Position numbers and translations under genes: made by a program. DNA of 64,000 bases from Euprymna scolopes. Its lineage: Eukaryota. The notes beneath the pieces were generated by a model. It saw nothing but the letters and a program-made list of their open reading frames with translations. It was not told where the DNA came from and did no database searches. Below, in pieces: positions 36,107 to 61,715 of the stretch. Numbering within the stretch: position 1 is the first letter of the stretch; each line of letters starts with the position of its first letter. The stretch is from NCBI GenBank assembly GCA_053919585.1, contig CM132803.1; one strand, given 5' to 3'.

Positions 36107-39100
36107 ATGCAACATCAGATAATGCCAATAATTGTATGCATATTCCTGCTGGTCTTACAACTTTGCCAAGGTGCAGATCTGACATACAATGTTGATGAAG
36201 GTAAGAGTCCAGGTACTTACCTGGGTGACATTGCAGCTGACTCCCACATCATGGATGATGTCCCTTTGGAAAACAGGCGTTTGATCACTTTCAACCAACT
36301 GCGACAGGAAATGGCAGGCACTTCTCAGTTATTTCATGTCTCCGAGAAGAAAGGAAAACTTTTTACTGCTCAGACTCTGGATGCTGAATCAATGTGTAAA
36401 TGGAATACAGAATGCTTCCAAATGGTGGATGTTGCTGTACGACAAGGAAAGACATTCATGAAGATTATAAAAATTAAAATAATTATAAATGACATTAACG
36501 ATAATGCACCAAAATTTCCAGAGAAACAAATTAACATGCACATCTCTGAAGGCGTCAGAGAAGGTTTCAAAAAAACGGTTCCAGTTGCAAAAGACAAAGA
36601 TGTTAGTGTAATTAATTCGCAGATAACTTATGAACTGAAAAAGACAAAAAATGAACCGTTCTCTTTGTCAATAGATAAAACCCCATTTGGCCCAACACAA
36701 TTAGATTTATTTGTTGATGGTAAACTTGACAGAGAAAAGAAAGATTCGTACATGCTCCAAATAATTGCAAAAGACAATGGATCTATACCTAAACAAAGCA
36801 TTTTAAATATTCATATCATAATAACAGATTTGAATGACAATCCTCCAAGATTTACAAAAAGTATTTATAATGTTTCGATAAAAAATGAAGATTATAAAGA
36901 GAAGGCAATTGTTACTGTGTCCGCTATCGATTTGGATGAAGGAGAAAATGGAAAAGTTTTCTATCATTTTAGTTCACAAACATCAATTGATGACAAAAAC
37001 AAGTTTGAACTTAATGAAAAAACAGGAGAAATATTTTTAAAACAGAAATTACTGTCAGTCCAGAACATTTATAAATTGTATGTAATGGCAACTGACAGTG
37101 GACATTCACCATTAAGTGGATTTGCAGGAGTGTTAGTAAATATTATAAACACTGAAAACAGATCGCCAAATATTTTTGTCACTTTTATGTCTGATTCAAC
37201 AGATAACACAGCTACTATACTTGAAGACATTGAAATTGGTAGTTTTATTGCTTATGTTAAAGTAACTGACCCTGATGCTGGACAAAATGGACAGGTTAAC
37301 TGTGAGTTGCACCATGATAAATTTCGTTTACAAAAACTAAGATCCAAAGAATACAAAGTGACATTGAAACACAAAGTTGACAGAGAAATGCAAGAGCACC
37401 ATGATGTTACAATCAGCTGCAAAGATGAAGGATCTCCTCCACAACACAGTGATAGCAAGTTCTCCATCAAAGTCAAAGATGTCAATGATGTAAGACCACA
37501 ATTTACAAAAGATACATTTAAATTCTCTGTGTTTGAGAATGAAAGTCCAAAGACGTCAGTTGGTTCTATCAATGCCACTGATCCTGATCTGGGAGCTGGC
37601 AGTAGACTCACATATTCTTTGCTTACGAAAAATGAAGACTTCCTACCTTTCAAGATAACCAGTGATGGCTTGATTTCAACAATCATGTCTCTTGACCATG
37701 AGTTCAAAGACATTTATAAATTCAACGTTTTAGTGAAAGATAATGGAAACCCTCCACTTGATAATAGCGTCAATGTCATTGTGCAGATTGAAGATAAAAA
37801 TGATAATGCTCCATATTTTACCTTTCCCAGTGTGAATCCTTTCAATCTCGATGTCAAATATCATCCACATCATACAAAGAACATCACTCTTCTCAAGGCT
37901 GCCGACAGTGACAGTCAAGAGAATGCATTTCTCAAATATGAAATAACTGCAGGCAACGATAAACAGTTGTTTGCCATCAATCATTATACTGGATTGTTGT
38001 CTTTCACTCGCTTACTTGGCCATCAAGATGCTGGCTCCTATCACCTGCAGTTTATGGTCAAGGATAGTGGTAGTCCAGTTTTATCTGCAAAGACATCAGT
38101 CTTTTTGACATTGACAGTTAGTAACAATACCGCAGATATCTTAAATGCTGCCTATACGCACACCGATATCAAGATCCACCAGTATTTACTCATTGTCATT
38201 GTGTTGGTTGCAGTCACCGTTGCTATACCAATTACTGCTGCAATTTCCATCTGCATCCTTCGTTGCATTGATACCAGAAGTGTTGCACAAGCACATCCAT
38301 TGGCTGACTCTTCCAGCAAATATTATCCCGAACAGGCACATGCAATGCATCCGTCTTACCAGACTACTTATTGGTCTGGTGTGTCTGTTGCTGTGCGAGC
38401 AGAACAAGATGTGCTTTGTAGAACTCTACCGGGAAGAGGCAGAAGGCCACAACATCGTGCAGATGTCACAAATGATGGACGGAGAAGTTCAGCCCTGGGA
38501 ATTAAAGTGCAGACGGCTACTGAGGTTATCTATGAGGTAGGTGTCTTTCTAGTTAATTTGAAATAACATTTCATGAGGTAACTACAATTTCCAGACTTTT
38601 TTCATATGAGCACTTTTATTGATAGTACACACATGAAACTCTAGTCTCCTTCGAAGTAATCTCCTCCAGCTGTAATGCACTTGTACTGTTCCAACAATTT
38701 CTGGAAGACCCCACTGAAATTTTCTTGTGTGCGCGTGTCAATGATCCTCGTCACAGCCTTTTTCATCTCCTCAATTGTCTCATAATAACAGCCTCTAAGG
38801 TTTTCTTTGAGCTTAGAGAAGAACCAAAAGTCACAGGGAGTAAAGTTTAAAGTATATGGAGGGCGAGGAACTGTCTTCATGTCCATCTTGGTCAAATAGT
38901 CCGTGATAAGGATGTAGTTGTAGACTATAGATTTGGGACAAACTTCACACAGATCCTCCGCATGATTGTGTGTACAGTTCCTGACACTGACATCAAACTG
39001 TGCACTTAATGTCTCTAGACACATGACGGTCCATATAGATGAAATTCTTTATTTGGCCAATCAACTCTGGTGTTCTGACTTCCTTACTCCTCACACATCT

Positions 39101-40355
39101 CTCATCATGCCTCACAGACTCCCAGCCTTCCTTGAATCTCTTATGCCACTCAAAAACTGATGCTTGATGCATGCAAGATGATCCAAAAGTAGTCTGAAGC
39201 ATTCCATATGAATCTGTGGCATTTTTTTTCCAAGTTAAAAAAAGAATCTTATTGCATATCATTCTTCTCAAATGTCCTCATGTATAGATTAGATTTTTGA
39301 AATCCACTAGCTGTGACAATAAGGCTTTAGTGGAGTGTATTCCAATTCCTGCTGTTACTATTTATTTGAACCTGAAATCATGAAAATAGGTCAGTCATTT
39401 CACAGGATGTATAACAATAGTGTACTGTATTTTCAAGAGTCTACAACAATTTTAAATGCCTGTACAAAAAAGTCTGGAAACTTATTGAAGGCAATTTGTA
39501 AAATTTAATCTGGAAAATTTCTTTTTAACTAACATTTGTGCATTTTTCTTTTTACTGGGATTACTTCAATTCATTTTTATCTTTCGTTGTACTCATGAAA
39601 GGAAATCCGAGGTGCAACTGGTGGCAAGAGACATGAAGACAGAAACTGCATGGGTCCTGCATGTCACCCTGACATGGAACCCTCCTCTCGATCAGACCAA
39701 GATGATCCCTATGCTGAAAGATATGCAAACCACTGTCAAAATGTATCAGGTTAGTTCTTTCTTGTGGCGTACCATGACAATATAAGATAAAGAATTTTTA
39801 AAAAATTTATTTTTGAGAATAAATTTTGCAAAATAAATTAATGGAGGATTATTTTATTTTGCTCATTCTGGTTTTTAATGTGAAGTTGAAATTGAGTCAT
39901 TTATACAACTATTTTATTTTGCATTCATTTCAGCATCTGACACATCTGATTACTATGAACCACACTCATCAGAGAATATTCATGAGGAATACACAGATAT
40001 GAAACCTTCTATGCAAACATTCATGTCTCCTGGAGATACAAGAACTCTTCCAAGACGGATGTATAAGGCAGATGCTGACCCTAACTCTGACTACAGGCAG
40101 TGGGGTAGTCTGAAGAAGACTGCAGTGGATAGATACACTTCTGACACGCAGTTACAACTGAACAATGCAGAGGCAGACAATGTTACATGTGAGCCTCAAC
40201 AAGAACAAGTACAAAGCACATTGGAAGAAGCAGACGAACCAGTAGAAAAAGAGGAAGAAGAAAAAAATGCTACACACACTTTACCCAATGATGTGGATGT
40301 TCAGCAAAATTCCCCTCTCGAAATACCTCACACAATACATTCAACGCAAACTTGA
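36107..40355 (+). CDS. Pcdh: Protocadherin Pcdh-3, join(36107..38536,39602..39749,39934..40355), about 999 aa
   Basis: Signal peptide, 6 EC, TM; acceptor ttcag|36099; frame-preserving junctions. Confidence 0.93.
38572..39500 (-). mobile_element. Internally deleted mariner element in intron 2 of Pcdh-3
   Basis: TIR cores tttccagactttttt / aaaaaagtctggaaa. Transposase N-terminus (ASVFEWHKRFKEG) and C-terminus (PPYTLNFTPCDFWFF...GDYFEGD*, degenerate YSPDLAPCD) are present; the central catalytic region is missing. Confidence 0.9.
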
Positions 40356-41954
40356 AAAAAAAATCAAACCCCATTTAATTTAAACGAAAATTAGATTGAA
40401 ATATAAAGTTCATAATTTTAATTTGTTTTTATTAATTATAGAAAATTTAAAAAAACTATATTTTGTTAATAAAATAAACTATCCAAATATCAAGTATTTA
40501 AATACTAAAATGCAAACAAAATTATTTAGAAAATAAAAACAAGAGCTCCCAAAGAATCTTCATTTATCAATATCAATTGATTTCATTTTTATAAATAGAA
40601 AACAAAAAATCAATAAGATTATTATAGAGAACATTTGCAAATGGATAAGTAACAAATTTGATGCAAATATTGATTATGAAAACAGTTTTACTTCAGAATT
40701 CTCTTGTAATCATTTATGCATATATTTACAAAAGGAAAAAAGTATAAAATGAAAAGTAAAGGTGCAACATTGATTTTTCAACATCCTTCGTTCCACAGCC
40801 TCACTGTATTAAGCGTTTTGCTGGGCTATCTAATTTCACTGTAATAATAAATCAACAACACACCCCTAACACACTATTTAAACACCTACCATATCTCTAA
40901 ACCACCAGAAATTTCTAGAAACGGAAACTTTTTCTTTGATGGAAATAAACTAGTGTTTACGTTTAACACCACAGTAACAATTTGAATTTGTCTGTGAACC
41001 TATAACTAGATTTAAATTTAAGCAAAATAAAATCTTAAAATCAAGGGTGACTACCACCAGCAGGTAGAGAGTAACCAAACAAATTAATGGCATACTACAT
41101 GTAGAGTCATCAGTTGACCACTTAGTAAGCTAGTAAGCTTAATTGAAACTCAAATCTAATTTATTATGTAAAGTATGTTATTTTCATCATAACTATTGTT
41201 AGCTTTAGGAAAACTAGAACCCCCCCACCAAAAAAAAAAAAAAAAAAAAAAATATCATATCAGAAATATTAATAAACATGTTCTTTGATTATTGTCAACT
41301 AGCTGTATTTGGAGACATATTAAAGGGTAGAGGACTTAACTGAAAAATAATTCAAAATATAGTCATGTTTAAAATTTGAAGAACCTTATTTTATGGTTGA
41401 TTTCAATAAATATTTGATTAATAATAAATAAAAACATAATTAAAGTAATAATGATCCAAGTTACAAAAAAGGCAAGAATCACACCCTAAACACACAAGAT
41501 GTGGCATAATAGTTAGGTTACATAGATAAAATAAAACAATAAAATGTAGCCATAGAAAATATAAAATTGAAATATTACTGAATTCTTAACACAATACAAT
41601 TTAATAATGAAACAAATCCTGCTTATTAAAACTTGAAAAATTTTCAGATTTGGTTTTCATTAGTGATTGTAATATAAAATAGATTTATAAAGTAAACAAT
41701 TTTGACATTAAAGTTTAGCAGATTAAATTATATATAGATATTTTAACATTTAACTTATAAAAAAAAAATAAAAAAAAACATGAAACAAAGAAAGCACATT
41801 TTTCTATGGCAGCTTTTTTTGTTCTGTTTCAATTATTCTTTCTAAATATTCAATGTCATTTTGGTCTTTTTTACAGTTCCCAAATATTTAGACAATTAAA
41901 TAAGAATTAGATTAAGTGTAAACAAAAATTCACTCTCTTGGTAATGAAAGAAAA

Positions 41955-42092
41955 AAATACCTTTTTAATATTGTGATTTTTTGTGCTTTGTCAGTTGGCT
42001 CTAGACGCCATGATGCATAGAACAGACTTAATCGGACAGTGGCTTTCCTTCTCCTTCATATATGCACTCTCCCACATCCACACATTAAACAT

Positions 42093-42160
<68 letters not shown>

Positions 42161-42302
42161 ATACCTTAATGTACACGTGTGTGTGTATCACCAGAGATGA
42201 ACAATGTGTTCACATAATAGTAGCAGCAGCAGATGTGTACACTCAAATACATACACATCTTTTCTCGTCACACAGTTTTGCTTCATTCATACAACATTGC
42301 AG
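41955..42302 (+). promoter_or_regulatory. Putative promoter and non-coding exon 1 of Pcdh-4 (donor after 42302), with expanded (CA)n
   Basis: Paralog of 1241-1554; ends CAACATTGCAG|GTTAGT. Confidence 0.72.
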
Positions 42303-43949
42303 GTTAGTTTTCAATTTTCTTTTTTCTGTCATTTTAATCTTTCTTTCAAGTTCATTATTTTGTGTTGCATTAACAAAGACAAACATAGCTTCATTGAAAA
42401 CATGAACAGTCTTTTTTTTTTTTGCTAAAAACTGCATATCTCTCATAGAGAGAAAATCTGAGTCATGCATTGAGTACATTCTTTTGTGTTTCATAAATTA
42501 TTTCCATGTTATAAAAATATTTTTCTTTATTCCACTTGAAATCTCTTTGTAAAACTTTTCTTCTACATTTTATTATTTAAACCTTGAAGTTTAGAAATTA
42601 GAAGGCTTGTATTAATTTATTCTTATATTTGTGAGCATAATGTTTTCCATTTTATTTTAATGTCAGCTTCTATTGAATTTGACTTAGTACAATGGTTTTA
42701 ATAAATTTGAAGACCGTCAAAAAGCCATACTTCCTCATATTTTATAAAAATGGATGAACTCAGTTAGTTGTTTCATGCATACATGATTTATTCTAAACAT
42801 TTTTATTTGATAAGGCACAGATTGTTAAATGTACAATCTTTTTTATTTTGTTTAGTTGGTACATGGATTCAATAAAAACTATCCTCAGTTAATACATATC
42901 AAACCTGATTATTATTTAATAATAAATAAACATATAAGAATACATAGTATTAATATATAATGATAAAAAAGATCAAAATTATAATTTAAGTTGTGTCCTT
43001 TTCATGTTCAATTATTTTTGTTTGATCGTTAATACAAATGTTGATAACATTTAATTTTATTAAAATCTGAACAAGTTTTTCCGTCATGTTTCTTAGGTCA
43101 TAGCTGTTTGACTGTAATAGCATTATAATCTTCCAATATTGAAACACATTAAATATAAAAGTTAGATTTTCATTTTTCCATTCTATTTCTACCATTATTT
43201 TAGTATTTTACATCAACAAAAATTATGATATTATTAAAGAAAACAATCTTCTGCATAGGATTGCATTCTTAAAAACACAAACTTGTAACAAAATAAATAT
43301 AAATTTAAAAAACATGTTCTCAAAAACTGACATTAAAATTAAAATACATAAAAAATTAGAAATGGAGAAATCATTTTTTCATAGGGGTTGATTAAACATC
43401 TTTTTATATCAATTTAAATCAACTGCTAGATGATTAAAGCCATTTTTATACAAACATGTAATTATTATTATTATTATAAACAAATACAATCTCAATGGCA
43501 TAGGCAAATAGGTTAGGTTTTTTAATTCTTAAACCACTTACAAAATAATAGATAAAAATTACTCGTTTTTACATAGTTCAAGAAATACAAATTAGATTAC
43601 TAAAATCTAATATTTGAGCTGAAAAAAGTTTGAGCGACAAAATAAAATTTTTTATTAGTAGTAAACAAAAACAAATGGATAATAAATATTATGTATCATA
43701 AGTTTTGAGATGAAGATTAATAATTTATATACAAAGTTCCATCAGTCAAAATGTTAAAATAACAACTAAGATAAAACTGTAGGCTGAGTAATTCAAAATA
43801 AACCTTTAATTCGATAAAAAATTTGACAGTTTATAAATATTATTAAATAGAAAAAAAAAATAGTTAAAAGTTCATAATTGGCTAATATAATTGATGTTTC
43901 CGACACTGAGATTTTCCTCTGTGTATATTATATCTAAAGGGTTCAAAAG

Positions 43950-45181: not shown

Positions 45182-48100
45182 ATGAAAATATCAGCATTAA
45201 TATTCTTGTGTTTCATCAAACTGTGCTGCAGTGCTGACCTGACATACAGTGTAGATGAGAGCAAGAGTCCAGGCACCTACCTGGGAGACATTGCTGCTGA
45301 CTCCCACATCATGGATGATGTCCCTTTGGAAAATCGGCGACTAATCACTTTCAACCAACTGCGACAAGGAAATGCAGGCACATTACAGTTGTTTCATGTC
45401 TCCAAGAAAAAAGGCAAACTCTTTACTGCCCAAACTCTCGATGCTGAATCAATGTGTAAGCGTGACATTGAGTGTTTTCAAATGGTTGATGTGGCTGTGA
45501 GGGAAGGAAAAACGTTTATGAAAATTATAAAGATTAAAGTCATAATAAATGATGTCAATGATAATCAACCTGAATTTCCAGAGAAAGAAATTGATTTACA
45601 CTTTTCTGAAGGAGTTAGTAAAGGATTCAAAAAACCCATTCCGAATGCCATTGACAAAGACGTTAGTGCTATTAATTCCAAAATAACTTATGAACTAAAG
45701 AAGAACAAAAATGACCCATTTTCTCTTGTTGTACAAAAGATTCCATTTGGAGCACCAAAACTTAGTATTTCTGTTGAAGAAAAGTTAGACCGTGAAAGTA
45801 AAGATTTTTACTCAATACAAGTTATAAGCAAAGATGGCGGATCACCGGCAAAGCAAAGCGTTTTAAATGTAAACATAATTATTGAAGACATGAATGATAA
45901 TGCACCAATGTTTAGCAAAGACATTTATAACATTTCAATAATGAACAAAGATTATGGAAATGTACCAATCGTAGAATTGACGGCACATGATTTAGACGAT
46001 GGAGAAAATGGAAAAGTTTCATATTATTACCAATCACAAACGTCTGACGAAATCAAAAAGTTTTTTGAGTTGGATAAAGAAACAGGGAAAATATATCTTA
46101 AAGAAAAGTTACCTCAAAATCCAGAATCTGTCTATAAGTTATTTGTTAGTGCAGAAGATGGCGGGGAATCGACACTTAGTGGTTATGCTGGAGTTCTTGT
46201 GAATGTTGTTAACACTCGAAATCGACCACCAAATATATTTGTTACATTCATGTCTGAAGCTACAGATAACACAGCTACAATTTTAGAAGATGTTGAAATT
46301 GGTAGTTTTATTGCTTATGTTAAAGTGACTGACCCTGATGCTGGACAAAATGGACAGGTTAATTGTGAGTTGCACCATGATAAATTTCGTTTACAAAAAC
46401 TAAGATCCAAAGAATACAAAGTGACATTGAAACACAAAGTTGACAGAGAAATGCAAGAGCACCATGATGTTACAATCAGCTGCAAAGATGAAGGATCTCC
46501 TCCACAACACAGTGATAGCAAGTTCTCCATCAAAGTCAAAGATGTCAATGATGTAAGACCACAATTTACAAAAGATACATTTAAATTCTCTGTGTTTGAG
46601 AATGAAAGTCCAAAGACGTCAGTTGGTTCTATCAATGCCACTGATCCTGATCTGGGAGCTGGCAGTAGACTCACATATTCTTTGCTTACGAAAAATGAAG
46701 ACTTCCTACCTTTCAAGATAACCAGTGATGGCTTGATTTCAACAATCATGTCTCTTGACCATGAGTTCAAAGACATTTATAAATTCAACGTTTTAGTGAA
46801 AGATAATGGAAACCCTCCACTTGATAATAGCGTCAATGTCATTGTGCAGATTGAAGATAAAAATGATAATGCTCCATATTTTACCTTTCCCAGTGTGAAT
46901 CCTTTCAATCTCGATGTCAAATATCATCCACATCATACAAAGAACATCACTCTTCTCAAGGCTGCCGACAGTGACAGTCAAGAGAATGCATTTCTCAAAT
47001 ATGAAATAACTGCAGGCAACGATAAACAGTTGTTTGCCATCAATCATTATACTGGATTGTTGTCTTTCACTCGCTTACTTGGCCATCAAGATGCTGGCTC
47101 CTATCACCTGCAGTTTATGGTCAAGGATAGTGGTAGTCCAGTTTTATCTGCAAAGACATCAGTCTTTTTGACATTGACAGTTAGTAACAATACCGCAGAT
47201 ATCTTAAATGCTGCCTATACGCACACTGATATCAAGATCCACCAGTATTTACTCATTGTCATTGTGTTGGTTGCAGTCACCGTTGCTATACCAATTACTG
47301 CTGCAATTTCCATCTGCATCCTTCGTTGCATTGATACCAGAAGTGTTGCACAAGCACATCCATTGGCTGACTCTTCCAGCAAATATTATCCCGAACAGGC
47401 ACATGCAATGCATCCGTCTTACCAGACTACTTATTGGTCTGGTGTGTCTGTTGCTGTGCGAGCAGAACAAGATGTGCTTTGTAGAACTCTACCGGGAAGA
47501 GGCAGAAGGCCACAACATCGTGCAGATGTCACAAATGATGGACGTAGAAGTTCGACTCTTGGAATTAAAGTGCAGACGGCTACTGAGGTCATCTATGAAG
47601 TAAGTATTTAATTTAGTATAATACTGAACAATAATATCACTTTTAGTTTCATTATTCCTTTAAAATTGCATTAGAGTGACATTTTAAAAAATAAATATTC
47701 ATATCCTTTGCATGGAACTATACATGGCCAAAGTGTACTCAATTTTCATATCCATAACAAGTGGAAAGAAAAGAGTGAAATTATTTTCATATTCATAATC
47801 ATTTTATGCCTTGGCAATTTAAGCATAATAAATGATTTTATTATTTATTTTTATACTATAATAAATTTGAATAGATAATTTTTTTTTCTAAGTTATCCTT
47901 CTTATTTCAAATGTTTAACTTATATTTTTATGTTTATAAACCAACTATAAAATCATTATTGAAGTAATTTTTACTATAAAATATTTTTGATACTTTTATT
48001 GAATATTCATTCAGTTTGTTTTGTCATAGTAGTAGTTTTAATAAAATGCATAGATTGTTTCATCTTGTATTAATTATTCAATAAAGGAAATTCGAGGTGC

Positions 48101-49674: not shown

Positions 49675-50000
49675 AATACTTGCCTTTCTTTTCATTGTAA
49701 TTTTTGGTGCTTTGTCAGAGTCAGTGACTCCAGCCGCCATGATGCATAGGGCAGACATGATAGGACTATTCTGGATTTCTTTCTTTCACTACAACATATG
49801 CACCCTCTCCTACATTTACACATATGCAAACACACAATTAATATCACTGACACATACACATGCACATATGTGTGTGTGTGGAAAAAAGGAGGCTAACATT
49901 GTGTTCATATAATAGCAGCAGCAGTAGCAGCCAGGCTGTACACCAGGGCACACACATCTTTTTCATTCTACCTTAGTGCTTCATCAATACAACATTGCAG
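49675..50000 (+). promoter_or_regulatory. Putative promoter and non-coding exon 1 of Pcdh-5 (donor after 50000)
   Basis: Paralog of 1241-1554; ends CAACATTGCAG|GTTAGT; starts only ~570 bp after the Pcdh-4 stop. Confidence 0.75.
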
Positions 50001-53000
50001 GTTAGTATTCAATTCTAATTTCATTTCATTTCAATTGAATTAAATCTTTTTATTTTTTTGTCAATTGTTTTATATTATTGTAGATTAACAAAGATAAAAA
50101 CAAAGATTAATTATAATTTACTTAATTGATAAGAAAATAGTACATCCTAAAATCTATTATGATACCCTCTCCATCATTTTTCTCACTCAGTATTTGAGTC
50201 ATGCATTTTATATGTTATTTTGATAGTCATTTTTTTTTTTACAAATATATTAAAAAAATAAAGATACATACAAATAGCTTATACTAATTGTTTTATTTTA
50301 TAATTTATACTACAAAAATTTTTTTTTATTAACTTTTATTCTGTTGTCATATATGGGAAGAATCTTATATGTAGCTAATATAATATATATATATATATGC
50401 ATGAAAATGATTTTACAATTTTAATTTTTAATTTTATCATAAATAATGCTCTAAAATGTACATGTACATATTTCATATATATATATATTTGTGTAAAATA
50501 TGTTATCCTTAAAGTTTATTTGTATATTTTTTTAAACAATCTCTGCATTGTGTTATGGATCGTAGACGAACTCACTAATATAATAGAGAAGGTATCACTT
50601 TAAGAGTTTTCAAAATAAATTACTATTGTTTACAAAATAAATGCAAACCGAATGTAAGATTAAACTATGTAAGTTAAAATAGAATTTAAACTATTCAGAT
50701 TTATGAAGTATTGATATATGAAATTTTAACTTTAAAGCAGTTTGCAAATATCAGGAGACATAAAATCGTTTTAATAATCTACAAACTCTTATGTTTGTAT
50801 TATTTAATCAACATTATTTTTATGTTGACAATTCCATTAATAAAACAAGATAATACATTATGGGCATTTAGATTTGAATTTGAGCTGAAGAAAATGAGAA
50901 CACTTCAAATGGGAAATGAATTAAATTGATAAAGTCTGTAAAGTAGAATTATGTTGAGAAAATAATCAAGTAACTATAAAACAAAGTTTTCAAAAAATAC
51001 ATATTAATATTTACATTTGAATAAAAAAAAAATCACAAAAGTTTATAGACCACAAGGTATTAATATCAAAGAACAATATTTAATTAAATAAATTTCCATT
51101 GCAAAAAGAAGAGAAGTTCAACCACATTATATTAGTTTTGTAAGAGAAATAACTTGCAAAAACGTTATGGCCAATTTTTATCATACAACAGAAAAAAATC
51201 ATTATGAATATATCATAAAACATTAATGCATCTCTTACCAAAAATCACCATCATATAAATAATTACATAAAACTGATTTATAAAAGTGACTATATTTTAC
51301 TGAGATTTCAACCTGTAACATTGGATTAAGTAATTCATTATGACTGTTATGCTAATTTTTAAAAATAAATTTATTAATATAAAACTTTATTAAATCCAAT
51401 ATATAAAATTTAGTCAGTTGGATTTTCCAAGTTAGACCTAAATAGCAAGACATCTTACAAATTGATATTTAATTCTGCCTATTTCATGAAATACAAAAAT
51501 TTTATTTTAAGTTTGTGTTTTATATTCAATCCTTCCTAATACATCTTTCAGTTCTATGAACTGAGAGAGATCCATCGTTTGTTACAAATGAAAAATTCAA
51601 AATGGCATCTAGATTCATTGGGTGCATAGTTATTCAAACATTTAGTTTCCTCTCCAAAGTGCACACCAATTTCCCGTAACAGTCATTTATTATTTGAAAT
51701 GAGAAAGCAAACAAAAACATTATTCAACATACACATGAATACATTTAATATTCACAACTTTATTCATAATTCAAACATAAATTTCTTTTAAAACAATTTA
51801 AGACAATTAGTAAACCATTTGGCCGCACAGTATCGCATGCTTTAATAAATACTAAGAAAATAGAACACTTACAAGATTTAAAAAACAAAATTAAAACATA
51901 GCATATTCAAAAGTAAAAAAAAAACAAACAGAAAAAACAAAAGTGAAATAAAATTTTACAAATCTTTCAAAGCCATTCAATTAAGGGAAAATAAAATTAT
52001 GATAAATTACACTTTTAATAACATCCAAAATGGATGCAAACATCAAATTTTTATTTTATTTGTTGAATCATAGACATATTAAGTATTTTCGAAAATGTTT
52101 ATTCCTTTAAATCATTTATGTATCTATTCTCCAAAGAATGGATTGTTTATAGTTATGAAGCATCAAAATTTGGCAAGAATAATTGAACTGAAAAATTTCT
52201 TGAAAAATATGAATGTTAATATTTTTATTTTGATCAATTCTTTTCTAGATCTGAAAAATATTGCTGTTAAAAAGATGTTTTTTTAAAAAAATAATTTAAC
52301 TTGGTCCTAGAACTAAGATTATATTTGTATTACTATTTACAGATGTTGTTACCTTTTATTTAAAGCTTATTTACTTGTAAAACTACTTATTGTTATCATA
52401 AGCAAAATATGTGAGAAATAAAACACATTGTAAAGCAAATAAATATTTCTGAACAAATATTTTCATTATCAACTTTAAACTTAAAAACAAAAATACCAGC
52501 ATAAAAAAACTTTCTATACATTTATTTAATTAAGTAATTCAATATGACCACTGTTAGGCTAATTTTTTAAAAATAGATAGATTTCATCTTGGTTTAATAA
52601 TAATAGAATGTTTCTTATTTAGTTGATGTAATATTTATTTAGTTTCAATTAGATATTCAGATCATCAACATTGTAAGTCATTTGTTTTCAAAGTAATTCA
52701 AAGTTGAACTCTATGGTGAATATTTATATTAAACAAGCTGTACTTATCAGCATTGCCCGGGAATAAAAGAAAAAAAAAATGATTGATTTGTAAGCATTTT
52801 ATTTTGTGAAACAAGAATTTTTTCTTTTAAGTTTGTTTTAGTATTTGACGTTAATTCATTATTAGTAAAGAGCAAATAATTATGTATTTTGATGTAGAAA
52901 CTTCATTTAATTTTTAAAAATATAACATGTTTTTAGATATTAATTTTTGTAGAAGTCAAAGGAAAATAATTCATGGCTAATGGCATTACTTCCCTTTAAT

Positions 53001-53220
53001 GCATAATCCAGTGAGTATGGGAAAAATATTAACTGGAACTGGCTTCTTCAGACTGATTGCTATTTGAGTTTTACTTCGAAAATCTATCAAGAAAAAAAAT
53101 CATATGTTATAATTGTCAGCCTCTAATTTAATTCTAATTTTTAATTTCAGGAGTGTTGGAAGATCTGAAGAAGTACATTTATGATTAATAAATTCAGAAT
53201 TATAAAAAATACTTCACAGA

Positions 53221-56200
53221 ATGGGAAACATGATGATACTTTTGTTGTTTTTCTTCAATGTTATACAAATCTGTCAATGCATTGACTTGACATACAATGT
53301 GGATGAAGGGAAAACTCCAGGTACCTACTTAGGGGACATTGCTGCTGACTCCCACATCATGGATGATGTCTCTTTAGAAAACAGACAATTTGTCACTTTT
53401 AATCAGTTGCAACAGGGAGTATCAAGTAATACTCAGTTGTTTCATGTCTCCAAGAAAAAAGGGAAACTCTTCACTGCTCAAACTCTTGATGCAGAATCAA
53501 TGTGTCAACGTGATATTGAGTGTTTTCAAATGGTTGACGTGGCTGTGAGGGAAGGAAAAACATTCATGAAGATCATAAAGATAAAAGTTATAATAAATGA
53601 TGTCAATGATAATCAACCCGAATTTCCGCAGAAAGAAATCGATTTACAAATCCTTGAAGGGATGAGTAAAGGTTTTGAAAAATCCATTCCGAATGCCATT
53701 GATAAAGATATTAGTGCAGTCAATTCAAAAATTACTTATAAATTAGAGAACAATGACAAAGTGCCATTTTCTCTTCTAATTCATAGGCTTCCTTTCAGTA
53801 CACCCAAATTAAGTATTGCTGTGCAAGAAAGATTGGACCGAGAAAATAAAGACTCTTATGTGATACAATTAATTGCCAAAGATGGTGGATCACCCCCAAA
53901 ACAAAATGTTTTAAACATTAACATCTATGTTACAGACGTCAATGATAACCCTCCCATTTTTAGCAAAGATATATATAATGTTTCTATTGAAAATAAAATG
54001 GCAAAAAACATTCCAATAACAAAAGTGACAGCAAATGATTTGGATGAAGGAGAAAATGGAAAAGTTTCATATCAAATAAGTGCAGAAACATCGGAAGATG
54101 TTAAAAATCTCCTTGAATTGAAAGAAATTTCTGGAGAAATATTTCTACGTGAAAACCTGCCATCCAGTGAAAACAGAATATTGAAATTATTAGTCACAGC
54201 TACAGACAATGGTCAACCACCATTAAGTGGTTTTGCTGTGGTGCTGATAAATATGATTAATACTCAGAACAGACCACCAAAAATATTTATTACATTCATG
54301 TCCGAATCTAAAGAAAACACAGTTTCAATTCTGGAAGACGTTGAAATTGGTAGTTTTATTGCTTATGTTAAAGTAACTGACCCTGATGCTGGACAAAATG
54401 GACAGGTTAATTGTGAGTTGCACCATGATAAATTTCGTTTACAAAAACTAAGATCCAAAGAATACAAAGTCACATTGAAACACAAAGTTGACAGAGAAAT
54501 GCAAGAGCACCATGATGTTACAATCAGCTGCAAAGATGAAGGATCTCCTCCACAACACAGTGATAGCAAGTTCTCCATCAAAGTTAAAGATGTCAATGAT
54601 GTAAGACCACAATTTACAAAAGATACATTTAAATTCTCTGTGTTTGAGAATGAAAGTCCAAAGACGTCAGTTGGTTCTATCAATGCCACTGATCCTGATC
54701 TGGGAGCTGGCAGTAGACTCACATATTCTTTGCTTACGAAAAATGAAGACTTCTTACCTTTCAAGATAACCAGTGATGGCTTGATTTCAACAATCATGTC
54801 TCTTGACCATGAGTTCAAAGACATTTATAAATTCAACGTTTTAGTGAAAGATAATGGAAACCCTCCACTTGATAATAGCGTCAATGTCATTGTGCAGATT
54901 GAAGATAAAAATGATAATGCTCCATATTTTACCTTTCCCAGTGTGAATCCTTTCAATCTCGATGTCAAATATCATCCACATCATACAAAGAACATCACTC
55001 TTCTCAAGGCTGCCGACAGTGACAGTCAAGAGAATGCATTTCTCAAATATGAAATAACTGCAGGCAACGATAAACAGTTGTTTGCCATCAATCATTATAC
55101 TGGATTGTTGTCTTTCACTCGCTTACTTGGCCATCAAGATGCTGGCTCCTATCACCTGCAGTTTATGGTCAAGGATAGTGGTAGTCCAGTTTTATCTGCA
55201 AAGACATCAGTCTTTTTGACATTGACAGTTAGTAACAATACCGCAGATATCTTAAATGCTGCCTATACGCACACTGATATCAAGATCCACCAGTATTTAC
55301 TCATTGTCATTGTGTTGGTTGCAGTCACCGTTGCTATACCAATTACTGCTGCAATTTCCATCTGCATCCTTCGTTGCATTGATACCAGAAGTGTTGCACA
55401 AGCACATCCATTGGCTGACTCTTCCAGCAAATATTATCCCGAACAGGCACATGCAATGCATCCGTCTTACCAGACTACTTATTGGTCTGGTGTGTCTGTT
55501 GCTGTGCGAGCAGAACAAGATGTGCTTTGTAGAACTCTACCGGGAAGAGGCAGAAGGCCACAACATCGTGCAGATGTTACAAATGATGGACGTAGAAGTT
55601 CAACTCTTGGAATTAAAGTGCAAACGGCCACCGAGGTCATCTATGAGGTAAGGACTCCTTTATTTTTGTTTTCATTCACAATTAAAAAAGTTATAATTAA
55701 TTAATTGTTCTAAAAAATAAATAAAAGGAAACAGAAATGGAAACATAATAGTTATTCATAAATTTTACAGAAGTTTAGATCAACATGGTACTTTGGGTTT
55801 CAAACTTAGGGAGTTGATCTAGGCAGATAAAAACTGGGTTATTTTGAATTTTTACTATAAACCACCTATTGGCTTTCATGTGGCTGATGAAAGTTAGTGA
55901 GTAGTTTAAAATTAAAGATTTTGCATTAATAGTTATAAAGTTCTGTCCAGAATTTTGATATAGTCCTCAGAATTATCCTGATTGCAATTGTCCAGTCCTT
56001 GAGCTAAAATAATCCTAAAACATTGAGCCGCTTTAATGTTTTAATGTTGGCACTGTATTCTTTGAGAGGAATAGCTCATGTTTCTTGGTTCAAACCTTTT
56101 GCACATATTTGTTGAAAAGATCAATGTGTATAATCACTCAATATTACTTGTTTCCAAAAATCAAGTCTTTCTAATAACATTTTGGGTAAAAATAAACTAA

Positions 56201-57708
56201 ACAATATGAAGAAAGGTTTTTTGTGGTTAGTTTCAATAAAACTGATTCCAAATTTAACAATGTTGTATTGCGCAAATACCTACACTCTTACCACCATATC
56301 CAAACTTTTGGGAATGTCTTTCAAATAATATTTTGGCGTATATTAACCTTTAAAAACAGTTTTTGCAGAGTGCTCGATGACAATTTAAATTTTCTGCCAC
56401 ACTCAGACAAATACTCTGTTATGTCATACTGTTTAAACTTCTTTGTGACTAAATGTAACATAGATCTAGTGATAACTAACCAGTTTGAAATAGTGCTGTT
56501 ACTATTTCCTGGTTTGTTGAAGTTACTAATTTCTTGTCTCAAATTAAAGCTCAGCTTCTTTGTTTTCCTCATTAGGTTCTAAATATGAAAATAACAATAA
56601 CGTCATTTGCAATGCGTAATGTTCTTTACTGAAATGCTCCCAATAAACAGCGCAAAAGATATCACTGATAAAATAAGTAAAGTAAATCACTTATACTTCC
56701 ATGAATCAATTAAGTTAAAACATTTTCTATCGTAAAATTAATTTTATCTTTTCCTAATAATTGTCAAATTTACTGTATTAACTTATTGTTATTCTGAAAA
56801 TTGAGACTTAGTAAAATAATAATAATGAAGCCAGCAGTAAAACAGGCATTAAATGGGTAAAAAAATATACCTATTTATGGCAGAACACCTTTGAGGAACA
56901 TCAATTTTAGAGTTACTGGTCTCCTCTACCAAGGAATACAAGTTTAAAGATTTTAATTAAAATTTATTATCGATTGAATATAGCTCATTAATTTATATAA
57001 GGTTTCTTTGTGTTTCTATGCTGAAAGGAAATTCGAGGTGCAACTGGTGGTAAGAGACATGAAGAAAGGAATTGTATGGCTCCAACTTGTCACCCTGATA
57101 TGGGACCTTCTCATCCAGATCAAGAAGATCCCTATGCTGAAAGATATGCTAATCATTGTCAAAATGTACCAGGTAAGTTTTATAGATTTGATGCATGGAC
57201 CCTTATAAATTGCATGATGAGTACATTAGAATATTTGAAATAAACACTATGAAAAAAATAAAAAATACATTTTACTAAATTTTTTTTATATATAAAACTT
57301 TCAGCATCTGAAACATCAGATTATTATGAACCACATTCAGCAGAGAATATTCACGAGGAATACACAGATATGAAACCTTCATTACAAACATTCATGTCTC
57401 CTGGGGATACAAGGACTCTTCCAAGACGGATGTATAAGGCAGATACTGACCCTAACTCGGACTATAGGCAGTGGGGTAGTCTGAAGAAGAACGCAGCAGA
57501 TAGATACACATCTGAAACGCAATTGCATTTGCACAATGTTGATGCAGACAATGTTACATGTGAGCCTCAACAAGAACAAACACAACCAGAAGTAGAAACT
57601 ATACAAGATGACAAAGAAAAAGAGATAGAACACATTGAGAATAGAGAAAACCTTCAACAAGATTCTCCACCAAACACTCCAACATCAATGCATTCAATAC
57701 AAACATAA
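53221..57708 (+). CDS. Pcdh: Protocadherin Pcdh-5, join(53221..55647,57028..57172,57305..57708), about 991 aa
   Basis: Signal peptide, 6 EC, TM; acceptor tttcag|53151; frame-preserving junctions. Confidence 0.93.
55770..56860 (-). mobile_element. Possible decayed piggyBac-like fragment in intron 2 of Pcdh-5
   Basis: Right end ggcattaaatgggtaa resembles a TTAA-CCC terminus. Minus-strand LFSLFLPKMLLE...ET-like remnant. Confidence 0.35.
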
Positions 57709-59169
57709 AATTTCAATCAATTATTTGATACTTTCCATTTTTTTTATAATATTTTATATACAATTTTCAAATGGGGGTTTAGCGTTATAAAAATATTATT
57801 CATATAAAATCTTAGAAATAACCAATTAAAATTAATATTCAGTTCTTATGTTATGTAACTAAAAGCCATTAATCACTCAGCATAATTTAAGAAAAGAAAT
57901 GCTGATACAAGATTTCTTTAAATTTTTTGTTTTATCATGTATTGCTTCATAAAAATAAGAATCTACTTCTAATCTTTGAATAAATTTAATTTATTTATTT
58001 CTATTGAAATTATCATACTATTTATTCTTTGCATTTAATAAAAAAATGATCTATTTAATCTTCATATAAAAATGGATTTAATCAATCATTAACTTTAATA
58101 ATTTTTTAATTATCACAACAAATAATTTTTTATTCTCTAGATTTTAAATATATGAAAAGCTAGTTATGTCTTTTTGATAAAAAATATCTTACAATTTTAA
58201 CAATTTGTAATAAAATACTTACCAATGTCTATTGTAACACTGAAGAAAAAATCTTAGAAATTTATTTCCTGATGTAAAAATATAAAGTTCACTCATTAAA
58301 ATGAGATATTTATGAATAAATTCAATTAAACGAAAAGTGAAAAATTTAAAATGAAAAGAGAGAAATATATTTTTCTTATAGGTAGCTTTTAGAAATAATA
58401 AATTCTTGTTTTTAATTAAGAAAAAGTTACATTTTTATTTTCACTTTTTTCTTCTTAAATAAGTGATTTTGCCTTATGTTGAATCTTAATTTTTTTTATT
58501 GCTAGATAGACTAAAAATTAAAACATGTACAGATTTTATTGTTTAATCAAAAATCATTTTTTATTTCATAAATTGTTAAAAAATTTAACCATGAAAATTA
58601 TAAAAAGGTAAAAATCATAATTATATTATTTTTATCACTTTAAGAATTAAAATTTTGTTCAAAATGTCATCTTCGATAGGATGTAAGAATCTAAGTTATT
58701 TTTATACTCTTTTTAGAAGAAAATACACTGAAACGTTAAAACACTATATTCTACTTCAAATTATTTAAATATTTTTTTAATTATTTTGCACAATATCTTT
58801 TTACTATCAAAAGAAAAGATGTTTATTGTTTCTATTAGTTGTACAATAATTAACTAAGTAAAAAAATGATGTGAAAAGTACTAATAGATAATATTGTTAT
58901 CCCTTTTTATATTTTGGATATTTAGGAGCAATAAAAAATAATTTGATATTTTCAATTTAATTTACATCTTTTAAAATAAGTTAGGAATATAAATATGAGA
59001 TGAAAAATGAATGAAATAAAGAACAAAAGAAATAGAAGAGATTAAGCTTCAAGTAAAATATTCAGTATTCAGTAATACTATTTTCTACTAAAAAAAAATT
59101 AAAAACATTTTTAAAATACTTTTGAATCATTTTTCCACAAGTTAAATTAAACATTTAATGCATAATTAA

Positions 59170-59434
59170 ACTACTTGCCTTTATGCTTTCTTTTGCTTTG
59201 TTTGAATCTGTGGCACAAGCTGTCATGATGCATAGGACAGATTTGATAGGACTATAGCTTTCTTTTTCCCCCACAAACACACATAATCACACACACACGT
59301 ATGCCCAAAAGGAGACTAACATTGTGTTCCTACAATAGCAGCAGCAGCAGCAGTAGCAGAAGAGCTGTACACCAGGATACAAATACGTATTTTGTTCCTT
59401 CATACAGTTATGCTTCATCAATACAATATTGCAG
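59170..59434 (+). promoter_or_regulatory. Putative promoter and non-coding exon 1 of Pcdh-6 (donor after 59434)
   Basis: Paralog of 1241-1554; ends CAATATTGCAG|GTTAGT. Confidence 0.75.
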
Positions 59435-61715
59435 GTTAGTTGACATTAATATTTTTATAACTTTTTTCATTTCTATCTTTTATGTTCATGTTTGCTTTGT
59501 AAAAAACTTAACAAAAATTAAATACACCAAAACTTTTCTTTATACAAATTGAATCAGTTTTTTTGCATAGAACATTCTAATTTTGATATTTTCACAATTT
59601 AATCACTTCACTGTTTTACAATCAGTGTACAACATGTAAAATGTCTGACTCATACATTTGGCATGTTCATTTAAAATGTTATATGTTAAAATGTTATATT
59701 ATTAAGAGTTTTATTATTGAAAAATGTCTAGATGAATTTAACTGAAAATTTTTAATAAAGTCTCTGAAAAGCAGGTTTGAATGCTGAAAAGACCATATAA
59801 ATTTTTTTTTTTTTCTATACATGATTTTTTGAGAATAAACAATATTCAGCCACATCAAGATGGCATCATGTAGAAGAATCGAAATAAAATGTCTTGTGGT
59901 GATGGTGGTTGTTGTTGTTGTTGTTATTATCATAGTGATAATAATAATAATAATAATAATAATTATTAATATTATTTCACATAATTCTTAAGTATATTTT
60001 ATCTACATAAAAAACAACAAAAACTAATTGCTGAGAAGAAAATACTAATTTTTATCAGCTTAATATTCAAATTTATGTTTAATATGATTATTAGTATTTT
60101 AATTTTATTAAAAATGGATTGCATTTTTCTAACAAAGATTTTACTATTACAACTACTCTTCAATTACAACTACTCTTCAAAAAAATGTTTTTATAGGATA
60201 AAAATTCATATTCTGTATGTATGATTCCTTTCTCATTAGATTCCTCTATTTTGTTATATGTACACATATATGCTGTGAACAGAACCAACCCAATTTTTAT
60301 CAAAATAATTATAAAATTTAGATTAAGGTTAGTTTAGGGTCAGAGTTTGATTCAAATTCTGTAGAAATACCTTTTCTTGATATTATTATCATCATCAATA
60401 GTAATAATCATTTAAGCCATTTAATGAATAAAGTTTAAAAATCTAAAATGACGTTCCATTTGATTATTTTTAAATTCAAATTAAAACTCTGAATTATGAT
60501 TATGCATGCATACATTTACACTTAACAAAAACTTAGATTACTTTGGAATAATTTTTCTTAAAAAATAAACTCTGCATAAAACACAATCACTAACAAAGTT
60601 TTTCTTGTTATAATTAAATAGATACATTTATTATTTTAAAAACAAAATTTGATGTTGCTGCTACCATTGGTTGTTATGGTCATGATTATGATGCTAACTA
60701 TTCCATCTGGCATGAAAAAAAAAAGAAGAGTCCCTCCTCTCATCTTTCTAAATCAGAAAAAAAATTTTTTCTTAATTTAAATTATGTTTTTTTTTTCTTT
60801 CTTTAATAATAAGAGCAAAAAGCACAAAGCAATCATTTCAAATTAGTCCCTAATATATAATTGTTTTATCTGACCAATGACAATTCCACCTTTTTGTTTA
60901 TACATTTTATTATATAAACAGTTGTTTATGGGAATATATTACCATTTTTATACTCATATAAAATCAATTTCCTCAGGTTTGAATGCTGAAAAGACCATAT
61001 AAAATAATCATTTTGTTGTTTTTTTTTTTTTTTCTAAAAAAATTAATTTGACTGTCTTCATACATTGTAAATTTCCTCAAAAATAAAATATATCAAATAA
61101 CACCATAAAAATCATTCTTTTGTTGAGTTTTTGCCAAATTACCAAAATATGAGATGAAAATTATTTTTGTTGTTTTTCTGTAAAGAAGACTATAGCTTCA
61201 TTAGTTGCTGCTTGGGAGGGGGGGGGGGGGAGTAGTTTTTTTAGTACTTGATTCCATATAATAAAGTGAAGCTGTTTTTTCTTTCTCAGTTTGTCATTAA
61301 TAGCATTGTATATTATGAATCAATATTTAAATTGGACTAGCTATTTTTTTTATTCCACTATGTTCTTTACAAGAATAAAATGTATTTTGCTGAAAATATT
61401 TGATAAGCTACTTATTCCAGTTAAGAAGATTGTTATAATGGAGACATTCTAAATTAATGACTGAAACAGCTGTATCAGTTAAAAAAATTGTCATTGTTCT
61501 ACTTCAACTAGCAGACATACACTTATATGTGTTTAAAATAAATACTAAAATATTTATTTCTTGATGATAATAAGTAAACTAATCTGACTTATAACACCTA
61601 ATTGAAATGCAGTTTCTATTCAATATGACATGGGACCTTTCGTATGAATCAAATAGTTAATGAACTTGCATACATGATTCTTACCGTAAGTTCATTATTA
61701 TGTTTAACTATTTAA

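What the first reader, a model, noticed from the sequence alone, without database searches (positions are those of the whole stretch)
38537..59700. Duplication/exchange unit offset from the gene: tail of gene n co-segregates with promoter of gene n+1
Seen: exon 4 falls into type A (Pcdh-1, 2, 5; ...DSPPNTPTSMHSIQT, near identical) and type B (Pcdh-3, 4; TSDTQLQLNN). Promoter/intron-1 starts fall into type A (P1, P2, P3, P6; TGACTCA context) and type B (P4, P5; TGAGTCA). Every A tail is followed by an A promoter and every B tail by a B promoter (5 of 5). Markers at the exon-2 3' edge (SSAL with gtagg in genes 1-3; SSTL with gtaag in genes 4-5) follow the gene's own promoter. So Pcdh-3 is A-head/B-tail and Pcdh-5 is B-head/A-tail. 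Inference: unequal crossovers near intron 2/exon 3 shuffle ectodomains onto different cytoplasmic tails.
Basis: partly seen in the sequence, partly recalled or inferred. Interest (0 to 1): 0.7.

Follow-up and report, generated by a model that had tools for sequence, protein, structure and literature searches.

The report
Offset duplication unit in protocadherin array
In a cephalopod (cuttlefish-type) row of protocadherin nerve-cell adhesion genes, the piece of DNA that is inherited, copied and exchanged runs from inside one gene to inside the next, so a gene's tail end travels with its neighbour's promoter and outer domains get re-paired with different tails; this is the expected outcome of unequal crossing-over, but had not been described for cephalopods.

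Summary
The core observation is real and holds beyond the window. I joined the window to 170 kb downstream, giving 19 intact genes, all on the + strand. The variable end of exon 4 falls into clades {1,2,5-12}, {4,13,14,15} and {17,18}. The leader/intron-1 blocks fall into the same clades shifted by one gene: {2,3,6-13 (+1)}, {5,14,15,16}, {18,19}. AU tests reject the in-phase groupings. Single BLAST alignments run unbroken from exon 4 across the spacer into the next leader exon and intron 1. Relatedness carries across the spacer (Mantel r about 0.6) and collapses across the homogenised 1.2-kb constant block of exon 2 (r 0.07-0.28).

A near-identical three-copy 10,476-bp unit, not checked with reads, has its junction inside that block (54,897-55,329). 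Genes 6 and 7 therefore carry one head with gene 5's tail, and gene 8 carries the same head with another tail.

- "Type B" is not one class.
- The SSAL/SSTL and gtagg/gtaag markers do not follow promoter type array-wide.
- The one datable crossover lies in exon 2, not intron 2/exon 3.
- One upstream junction breaks the rule.

Verdict: this is ordinary unequal crossing-over plus conversion, newly documented in cephalopod protocadherins. The scan had not noted it before.

The parts
36107..38536 (+). Gene 3, exon 2 (EC1-6, TM, proximal tail). Alpha-type promoter, unique EC1-3, non-A tail, so a head/tail chimera.
   Evidence: Intact ORF and Cadherin domains. Promoter clade {1,2,3} against tail outside clade A.
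37240..38443 (+). Homogenised constant block (C) of gene 3. The same block lies at 46,303-47,506 (gene 4) and 54,351-55,554 (gene 5).
   Evidence: Pairwise diversity 0-0.7% among 19 genes, against 7-33% in EC1-3 and about 9% in the last 95 bp of exon 2.
39602..40355 (+). Gene 3 tail: exon 3 (about 39,602-39,749), intron 3, exon 4 (39,934-40,355; unique 'B1' end).
   Evidence: EIRG acceptor, exon 4 ORF to the stop. Exon-4 variable half differs 33-45% from all others.
41943..42309 (+). Leader (non-coding exon 1) block of gene 4, ending in CAG|GTTAGT. A singleton type.
   Evidence: nhmmer hits with a leader profile. Conserved donor. Distances.
45182..47599 (+). Gene 4, exon 2. EC1-3 is sister to gene 5 (100/99).
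48087..49105 (+). Gene 4 tail: exon 3 (about 48,087-48,234) and exon 4 (48,702-49,105). It is a mosaic. Intron 2 to the start of exon 4 resembles genes 17/18. The variable half of exon 4 resembles genes 13-15.
48713..50035 (+). One unbroken homology segment: exon 4 of gene 4, spacer, leader of gene 5, first 29 bp of intron 1. It aligns as single HSPs with the same segment of units 13-14 and 14-15, about 100 kb away.
   Evidence: HSPs of 1,421 bp (75%) and 1,411 bp (74%).
49662..50006 (+). Leader block of gene 5. It groups with the leaders of genes 14-16.
   Evidence: 86/92; 93/91.
53221..55647 (+). Gene 5, exon 2. Beta-like promoter, EC1-3 sister to gene 4, A-type tail, so a chimera.
54897..55329 (+). 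Interval that holds the junction of the recent three-copy 10,476-bp unit, inside the constant block of exon 2 (gene-5 coordinates).
   Evidence: The last marker private to the head of genes 6/7/8 is at 54,897. The first marker private to gene 8's tail side is at 55,329.
57028..57708 (+). Gene 5 tail: exon 3 (57,028-57,172) and exon 4 (57,305-57,708; type A). It is 100% identical over these bases to the gene 6 tail, and the gene 7 tail differs by one substitution in exon 4.
   Evidence: RNA joint 57,172/57,305 with GT..AG.
59161..59442 (+). Leader block of gene 6 (alpha type). Exon 1 ends at CAG|GT, 59,434/59,435.
   Evidence: A contig of run X4 stops matching exactly at 59,434 and continues elsewhere.
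63650..64000 (+). Start of exon 2 of gene 6, cut by the window end. It is the first of three identical heads (genes 6, 7, 8).

Best explanation
The array is built from historical units that run from inside gene n to inside gene n+1. Each unit holds the variable end of exon 4, the 3' flank, the spacer, the leader exon of gene n+1, intron 1 and EC1-3 of gene n+1. Units are joined at coding blocks that stay near-identical among paralogues. The main joint is the 1.2-kb constant block of exon 2. The roughly 120-bp conserved core of exon 4 is a second joint.

Shown:
- The register of homology.
- Incongruence of head and tail trees.
- Loss of relatedness across the constant block.
- One recent unit multiplication with its junction in that block.

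Inferred:
- Misaligned paralogues recombine (unequal crossing-over/NAHR, plus conversion tracts) where identity is long enough.
- Each event copies or swaps 'tail of n + head of n+1' and leaves in-frame genes whose ectodomain is paired with a different tail.
- A block of duplicated units is therefore bounded by a foreign head on the left and a foreign tail on the right. Gene 5 … gene 8 shows this for the recent event, and gene 13 … gene 16 for an old one.
For: - Tail clades {1,2,5,8-12}, {4,13,14,15} and {17,18} equal the promoter clades {(1),2,3,8-13}, {5,14,15,16} and {18,19} shifted by +1.
- AU tests reject the in-phase clades. On promoter data p = 1.6e-5, 0.0026 and 8e-4. On EC1-3 data p = 2.7e-4 and 1.7e-4. 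Head clades tested on tail data give p = 2.6e-4, 2.8e-60 and 0.005.
- Unbroken HSPs run from exon 4 through the spacer and leader into intron 1 between distant units. Units 13 and 14 share a 2,393-bp HSP.
- Mantel map: leader to intron-1 start 0.85; intron-1 start to EC1-3 0.63; EC1-3 to exon-2 edge 0.07; EC1-3 to exon-4 end 0.26; 3' flank to next leader 0.62; exon-4 start to next EC1-3 0.65.
- Three copies of a 10,476-bp unit carry only two clean substitutions and a poly-G length change. The junction interval is 54,897-55,329, inside the constant block. The three copies are the only 100% matches in the assembly.
- Exon 4 of genes 4 and 18 switches nearest relatives across its conserved core.
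- All 19 genes keep open exons 2, 3 and 4.
Against: - Only one event can be mapped.
- Counts of old switch points (5 between EC1-3 and the exon-4 end, 1 in a spacer, 2 in intron 1) do not differ significantly from breakpoints spread evenly over the unit. A hotspot in the constant block is therefore inferred from homology requirements, not demonstrated.
- Introns 2 and 3 are unalignable even between sister units, so the left end of old units cannot be placed. In units 13-15 homology starts only 23 bp before exon 4.
- One upstream junction has a B-type tail followed by an alpha-like promoter.
- The three-copy unit was not checked with reads from the reference animal. In an independent DNA run it sits at about the same depth as single-copy EC1-3 of gene 5: 15-24 against 14-16.
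Confidence: 0.62

Rival explanations
1. Plain physical linkage with no preferred exchange site. Tail n and promoter n+1 lie only 0.26-2.6 kb apart, while a gene spans 8-13 kb. Breakpoints spread evenly along the DNA would mostly fall inside genes and give the same offset pattern. The constant block plays no special part.
For: Spacer, intron and exon sizes. Old switch points number 5 between EC1-3 and the exon-4 end, 1 in a spacer and 2 in intron 1. That is close to the length shares of those intervals. Mantel r at shifts 0 and +2 is also sizeable, because the array has long runs of one type.
Against: The one mapped junction lies in a 432-bp interval of the constant block, which is about 11% of the unit. 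Mosaic switches in exon 4 sit in its conserved core. Homologous exchange needs long identity. Outside the near-identical three-copy unit, only the constant block (over 99%) and exon 4 of A tails (93-98%) offer that between non-adjacent units.
Confidence: 0.18
2. Gene conversion alone. Patches that cover the exon-4 end, the spacer and the next promoter were copied between units without any crossover or change in copy number, so the offset reflects tract positions rather than the duplication unit.
For: Conversion clearly acts here. The constant block is homogenised. Exon 4 of A tails is 93-98% identical with sharp edges at the exon borders. Gene 18 carries an A-type patch inside a B3 tail. Genes 8 and 9 share exon-2 edge to exon 4 at 94-98%, but not the flanks.
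Against: The spacer, leader and intron-1 homology between units of one clade is old (70-76% identity) and unbroken, as expected of duplicated DNA rather than recent tracts. A rise to three copies of a 10.5-kb unit cannot come from conversion.
Confidence: 0.12
3. Assembly artefact. The assembler joined reads wrongly across the identical 1.2-kb blocks, or over-expanded a repeat. That would create false head/tail chimeras and a false triplication.
For: The constant block is identical in about 29 genes. The three unit copies are nearly identical. An independent DNA run shows the unit at roughly single-copy depth, with 1.3-1.8% differences from the reference. Short-read contigs break at the block's edges.
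Against: The tail(n)-promoter(n+1) continuity lies in unique sequence and does not depend on joins across the block. HiFi reads, as used for published cuttlefish assemblies (PMC13218726), are far longer than 1.2 kb. The copies carry two clean private substitutions and are much more alike than the roughly 1% heterozygosity reported for Sepia officinalis (PMC13218726), so they are not stacked haplotypes. The end structure of the old block (genes 13-16) repeats that of the recent one.
Confidence: 0.06

Closest known systems
Regional gene conversion in vertebrate (fish, coelacanth) clustered protocadherins: Noonan et al. 2004, Genome Res 14:354, cited in PMC6339937
   Same: Paralogues in a tandem protocadherin array keep the membrane-proximal ectodomain, TM and proximal tail near-identical, while the outer EC domains stay diverse.
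   Different: In vertebrates the distal tail comes from shared constant exons added by splicing, so there is nothing to re-pair. Here every gene owns exons 3 and 4, and exchange at the homogenised block changes which tail and which downstream promoter lie next to a head.
Hybrid genes from unequal crossing-over in tandem arrays: haemoglobin Lepore/anti-Lepore, red/green opsin array, KIR and plant NBS-LRR clusters (from general knowledge, not tested here)
   Same: Misaligned paralogues recombine within homologous coding sequence. The duplicated segment runs from mid-gene to mid-gene, and the products are in-frame chimeras plus a change in copy number.
   Different: Here the junction sits in a block that is itself kept identical across about 29 genes, so almost any pair of genes can misalign. 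The pattern is seen as the standing architecture of a whole array, not as a single variant.
Cephalopod protocadherin expansions described as 'full gene duplications' with homogenisation by gene conversion: Albertin et al. 2022, PMC9068888; Styfhals et al. 2019, PMC6339937
   Same: Same gene family and clade. The genes are tandem, same-strand and multi-exonic, and each has its own cytoplasmic exons.
   Different: Those papers do not resolve the register of duplication. Here the unit is shown to be offset from the gene, so duplicates are head/tail chimeras at the ends of each duplicated block.

Membership tests
Protocadherin (cadherin superfamily, 6 EC + TM) | N-terminal Cadherin_2 domain followed by repeated Cadherin domains, in one large exon | tested here: met
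   PF00028 E about 1e-73 to 1e-76 with 5 stretches, plus PF08266, in all five window ORFs.
Vertebrate-type clustered protocadherin locus | Variable exons, each with its own promoter, spliced to constant exons shared by the cluster | tested here: not met
   Every one of 19 genes is followed by its own exon 3 and exon 4. An RNA joint of exon 3 to exon 4 within the gene 5 unit was seen. Splicing to a neighbour's tail was neither seen nor excluded.
Concerted evolution / regional gene conversion | A sub-region near-identical among paralogues whose flanks are much more diverged | tested here: met
   Constant block diversity is 0-0.7%, against 7-33% in EC1-3. Exon 4 of A tails is 93-98% identical, against about 70-75% in the flanks.
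Unequal crossing-over / NAHR tandem duplication with hybrid genes | Duplicated segment bounded by homologous positions of two paralogues, with the junction inside a high-identity tract | tested here: met
   A 10,476-bp unit is present three times. Its junction interval, 54,897-55,329, lies within the constant block.
Unequal crossing-over / NAHR tandem duplication with hybrid genes | Flanking-marker exchange: head and tail of one gene have different nearest relatives | tested here: met
   AU tests reject in-phase clades. Genes 3, 5, 13 and 16 are chimeras.
Unequal crossing-over / NAHR tandem duplication with hybrid genes | Copy-number polymorphism or the reciprocal product in the population, and read-level support for the junctions | tested here: inconclusive
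   An independent DNA run shows the unit at about single-copy depth, 15-24 against 14-16 for EC1-3 of gene 5. That fits a polymorphism or an over-expanded assembly. Reference-animal reads were not available.

The most novel reading that the evidence does not exclude
Exchange at the constant block is ongoing and polymorphic within the species. The three-copy unit is under 0.05% diverged and is not at triple dose in another animal's DNA run. Individuals would then differ in how many protocadherin genes they have and in which ectodomain is joined to which tail and promoter. The homogenised block would act as a standing recombination cassette, doing over generations what vertebrates do by splicing to constant exons. 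A still bolder reading, not excluded here, is in-frame splicing from exon 2 of one gene to exon 3 of a downstream gene, since all junctions share phase 0.
Probability: 0.3. Interest if true: 0.6.

Novelty: new member of a known kind. Interest (0 to 1): 0.4.

Why it matters
Cephalopod protocadherin diversity is described as arising by full gene duplication plus gene conversion (PMC9068888). This array shows that the copied and exchanged unit is out of register with the gene. Three consequences follow.

- Expansion automatically creates new ectodomain/tail pairings and puts a tail next to a different downstream promoter.
- Head/tail discordance across the homogenised block is evidence that crossing-over, not only conversion, takes part in keeping that block identical.
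- Gene trees built from whole protocadherin proteins of such arrays mix at least three histories (EC1-3, constant block, tail) and should be partitioned.

It also flags a candidate copy-number polymorphism that can be tested with existing long-read data. The mechanism is textbook, so the value lies in annotation, phylogenetics and the evolution of the array rather than in a new principle.

Tried and rejected
The upstream array is therefore represented only by ten 3.5-kb tail loci.
- Two extra 'EVIYE' peptide hits at 104,326 and 126,312 (joined coordinates) looked like exon-2 fragments. They lie in a repeat shared by introns 1 of genes 10 and 12 and are chance matches.
- Mantel tests at shifts -1, 0, +1 and +2 favour +1 in most partition pairs, but only weakly, because long runs of one type give high correlation at every shift. 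I rely on trees, AU tests and contiguous HSPs instead.
- The exon-2 edge (last 95 bp plus the start of intron 2) was tried as a marker for the side of the crossover. It is a patchwork: gene 4 matches genes 8 and 9, and gene 3 half matches gene 1. It follows neither head nor tail.
- Introns 2 and 3 were compared to place the left ends of old units. They are unalignable even between sister units.
- The look-up of encoding contigs with the gene 5 exon-2 ORF found nothing.
- Pfam finds no domain in the exon 3 or exon 4 peptides.
- Short-read contigs and paired RNA reads cannot phase EC1-3 with a tail across the identical block.
Exons were translated and searched one at a time by reference.
- The large protein searches were not used, because no claim here rests on them.
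Full report
**What is in the window**

The window is C21:73,656,001-73,720,000 of a 5.9-Gb assembly. Earlier notes of this scan call the animal a cuttlefish-type cephalopod. I did not verify the species. The window holds five complete protocadherin genes on the + strand and the start of a sixth.

Each gene has four exons:
- A non-coding leader exon ending in a conserved CAG|GTTAGT donor.
- A large exon 2 of about 2.45 kb.
- Exon 3, entered in phase 0 as …EVIYE|EIRG….
- Exon 4.

Read evidence supports the model. Raw polyA RNA reads show the exon 3→4 joint of the gene 5 unit at 57,172/57,305 with GT..AG. A contig of run X4 stops matching exactly at the leader-6 donor (59,434).

Exon 2 has three parts:
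- EC1-3, which differs 7-33% between genes.
- A 1.2-kb constant block with diversity 0-0.7%.
- A 95-bp 3' edge with diversity of about 9%.

**Checking the observation**

With two B and three A, a perfect match has a chance of about 1 in 10, so five genes prove little.

To widen the test I joined the window to 170 kb of downstream sequence. Joined coordinates equal window coordinates. This gives 19 genes, all on the + strand, with open exons 2, 3 and 4. V-region hits show 29 genes in the whole array.

Genes 6 and 7 are near-identical copies and were left out of all trees and tests.

**Array-wide result**

Maximum-likelihood trees give these clades:

| Partition | Clades (support) |
|---|---|
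| Tail (exon 4 + 250 bp of 3' flank) | {1,2,5,8-12} 95/99; {4,13,14,15} 99/99; {17,18} 100/99 |
| Promoter (leader + 450 bp of intron 1) | {1,2,3,8-13} 77/89; {5,14,15,16} 86/92; {18,19} 100/100 |

The promoter clades are the tail clades moved by one gene. By class, 14 of 14 informative junctions fit at shift +1. The counts are 10 of 14 in phase, 9 of 13 at +2 and 7 of 13 at -1.

Cross-partition AU tests:

| Data tested | Clades rejected | p |
|---|---|---|
| Promoter | in-phase tail clades | 1.6e-5, 0.0026, 8e-4 |
| EC1-3 | in-phase tail clades B2 and A | 2.7e-4, 1.7e-4 |
| Tail | head clades | 2.6e-4, 2.8e-60, 0.005 |

The continuity is direct. Exon 4 of gene 4, the spacer, leader 5 and the first 29 bp of intron 1 (48,713-50,035) align as one HSP with the same segment of units 13-14 and 14-15, about 100 kb away. 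Units 13 and 14 share a single 2,393-bp HSP from 23 bp before exon 4 to 942 bp into the next intron 1.

A Mantel 'linkage map' shows where relatedness is kept and lost:

| Pair of partitions | r |
|---|---|
| Leader – intron-1 start | 0.85 |
| Intron-1 start – EC1-3 | 0.63 |
| EC1-3 – exon-2 edge | 0.07 |
| EC1-3 – exon-4 end | 0.26 |
| Exon-4 end – 3' flank | 0.62 |
| 3' flank – next leader | 0.62 |
| Exon-4 start – next EC1-3 | 0.65 |

Relatedness passes through the intergenic spacer and is lost across the constant block.

**A recent event that can be mapped**

Gene 5's tail region recurs twice more at 100% identity, at periods of 10,477 and 10,475 bp.

Aligning the four successive units gives a clear picture:
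- Copies 5, 6 and 7 are identical from the constant block of exon 2 onward, through tail, spacer, leader, intron 1 and EC1-3.
- Gene 8 shares the head of genes 6 and 7 but diverges from them at the end of exon 2.
- The last marker private to the 6/7/8 head is at 54,897 (gene-5 coordinates).
- The first marker private to gene 8's tail side is at 55,329.
- The junction therefore lies in a 432-bp interval of the constant block.

Genes 6 and 7 are one ectodomain on gene 5's tail. Gene 8 is the same ectodomain on another tail.

The older block of units 13-15 has the same end structure. Its foreign head on the left is gene 13, which has alpha EC1-3 and promoter. Its foreign tail on the right is gene 16.

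**Caveats on the recent event**

Points in favour of the three copies being real:
- They differ by only two clean substitutions and one poly-G length.
- They are the only 100% matches in the assembly, with no copies on other contigs.
- They are far more alike than the roughly 1% heterozygosity reported for Sepia officinalis (PMC13218726), so they are unlikely to be stacked haplotypes.

Points against:
- I could not lay the reference animal's long reads.
- In an independent DNA run (X1) the unit's contigs differ from the reference by 1.3-1.8%.
- Those contigs sit at depth 15-24, like single-copy EC1-3 of gene 5 (14-16), not at three times that depth.
- In the same run the constant block sits at 441-570, which is about 30 copies.

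Either the copy number is polymorphic or the assembly over-expanded the unit. The array-wide result does not depend on these copies.

1. 'Type B' is not a class. Tails 3 and 4 differ by 35% in the variable half of exon 4. Tail 4 belongs with tails 13-15. Promoters P4 and P5 are about as far from each other as from anything else.
2. TGACTCA and TGAGTCA are reverse complements of one another. The exact heptamer exists only in P1-P10.
3. SSAL/SSTL and gtagg/gtaag do not follow promoter type array-wide, and the exon-2 edge is a patchwork. The argument that places the crossover in intron 2/exon 3 therefore fails.
4. There are further breakpoints.
   - Promoter 3 is alpha but EC1-3 of gene 3 is not in {1,2,3} (AU p = 5e-6).
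   - Promoter 5 groups with 14-16, but EC1-3 of gene 5 is sister to gene 4 (100/99; AU p = 6e-4 against {5,14,15,16}).
   - Exon 4 of gene 4 switches from 17/18-like to 13-15-like across its conserved core.
   - Gene 18 carries an A-type patch.
5. Upstream, four 'B4' tails form a clade. Two of them are followed by sister leaders, as the rule predicts. One (locus L022) is followed by an alpha-like leader, and another by a long-branch leader. The rule therefore holds at 5 of 6 classifiable switch points.

**Mechanism**

Shown:
- The offset register.
- Incongruence of head and tail.
- The discontinuity at the constant block.
- One unit multiplication with its junction in that block.

Inferred:
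- Unequal crossing-over (NAHR) and conversion tracts are anchored in the only stretches that remain long and near-identical between paralogues. Outside the three-copy unit itself, these are the constant block (over 99%) and, to a lesser extent, exon 4 (its core is 92-98% identical in all genes; the whole exon is 93-98% among A tails).
- Because junctions fall in homologous coding sequence, the products stay in frame.

I could not show statistically that the block is a hotspot. The old switch points (5, 1 and 2 in the three intervals) fit breakpoints spread evenly by length. Tail n is also simply much closer to promoter n+1 (0.26-2.6 kb) than to its own promoter.

**Comparison with what is known**

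- Regional homogenisation of protocadherin paralogues is long known in fish (Noonan et al. 2004, cited in PMC6339937).
- Hybrid genes from unequal crossing-over are textbook (Lepore haemoglobin, opsin arrays). This comparison is from general knowledge.
- For cephalopods the literature I could search speaks of 'full gene duplications' and gene conversion (PMC9068888, PMC6339937). The cuttlefish genome paper only counts the family (PMC13218726).
- I found no description of the offset unit.
- This scan's earlier notes cover the constant block, the leader exon and the YEEI junction, but not this feature.

**Verdict and limits**

This is a real, coherent feature of the array. It is explained by a known mechanism and is moderately interesting, mainly for cephalopod protocadherin evolution and for how such families should be analysed.

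The two masked N runs (32,330-32,462 and 32,694-32,826) were left as they are.

Noticed in passing
window 57,299-57,841 and homologues (e.g. 11,910-12,359; 28,009-28,549): Exon 4 of the A-type tails is a second homogenised block. It is 93-98% identical among ten genes from about 10-30 bp before the exon to 17-330 bp past the stop, while the flanks are only about 70-75% identical.
   Followed up: partly
L046:3498-3679 and L046:3921-4102: Intron 2 of gene 8 holds a second copy of exon 3 with its acceptor (95% identical, 423 bp upstream of the used copy). If both copies were spliced in, the frame would shift.
   Followed up: no
L036:7786-9501: A 61-bp minisatellite of about 28 copies (98-99% identity) fills part of intron 3 of gene 17. 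A 59-bp tandem repeat lies at L039:1379-1862.
   Followed up: no
window 54,300-55,600: In an independent DNA run the constant block has 28-36 times the depth of single-copy flanks. This agrees with the 29 genes counted in the assembly.
   Followed up: partly
window 53,500-54,300: EC1-3 of gene 5 has no reads in two polyA RNA runs, at the depth sampled, although those runs cover the constant block and exon 4. It is present at low depth in contigs of run X4. Gene 5 may be weakly or narrowly expressed.
   Followed up: no
window 43,940-44,405 (- strand), 11,258-11,488; L033/L035 region (joined 103,360-105,218 and 125,354-127,184): A dispersed repeat is shared by introns of genes 1, 4, 10, 12 and 18. 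The copies in intron 1 of genes 10 and 12 are 88% identical over 1.9 kb. It also produced chance 'EVIYE' peptide hits.
   Followed up: partly
window 1,554; 15,327; 30,848; 42,302; 49,999; 59,434 (leader ends): All 19 leader exons end in the same donor context, …(T/A)TTGCAG|GT(T/A)AGT. This holds even in the most diverged leaders (genes 18, 19).
   Followed up: partly
window 32,330-32,462 and 32,694-32,826: Two masked N runs of 133 bases each lie in intron 1 of gene 3. They were left untouched.
   Followed up: no
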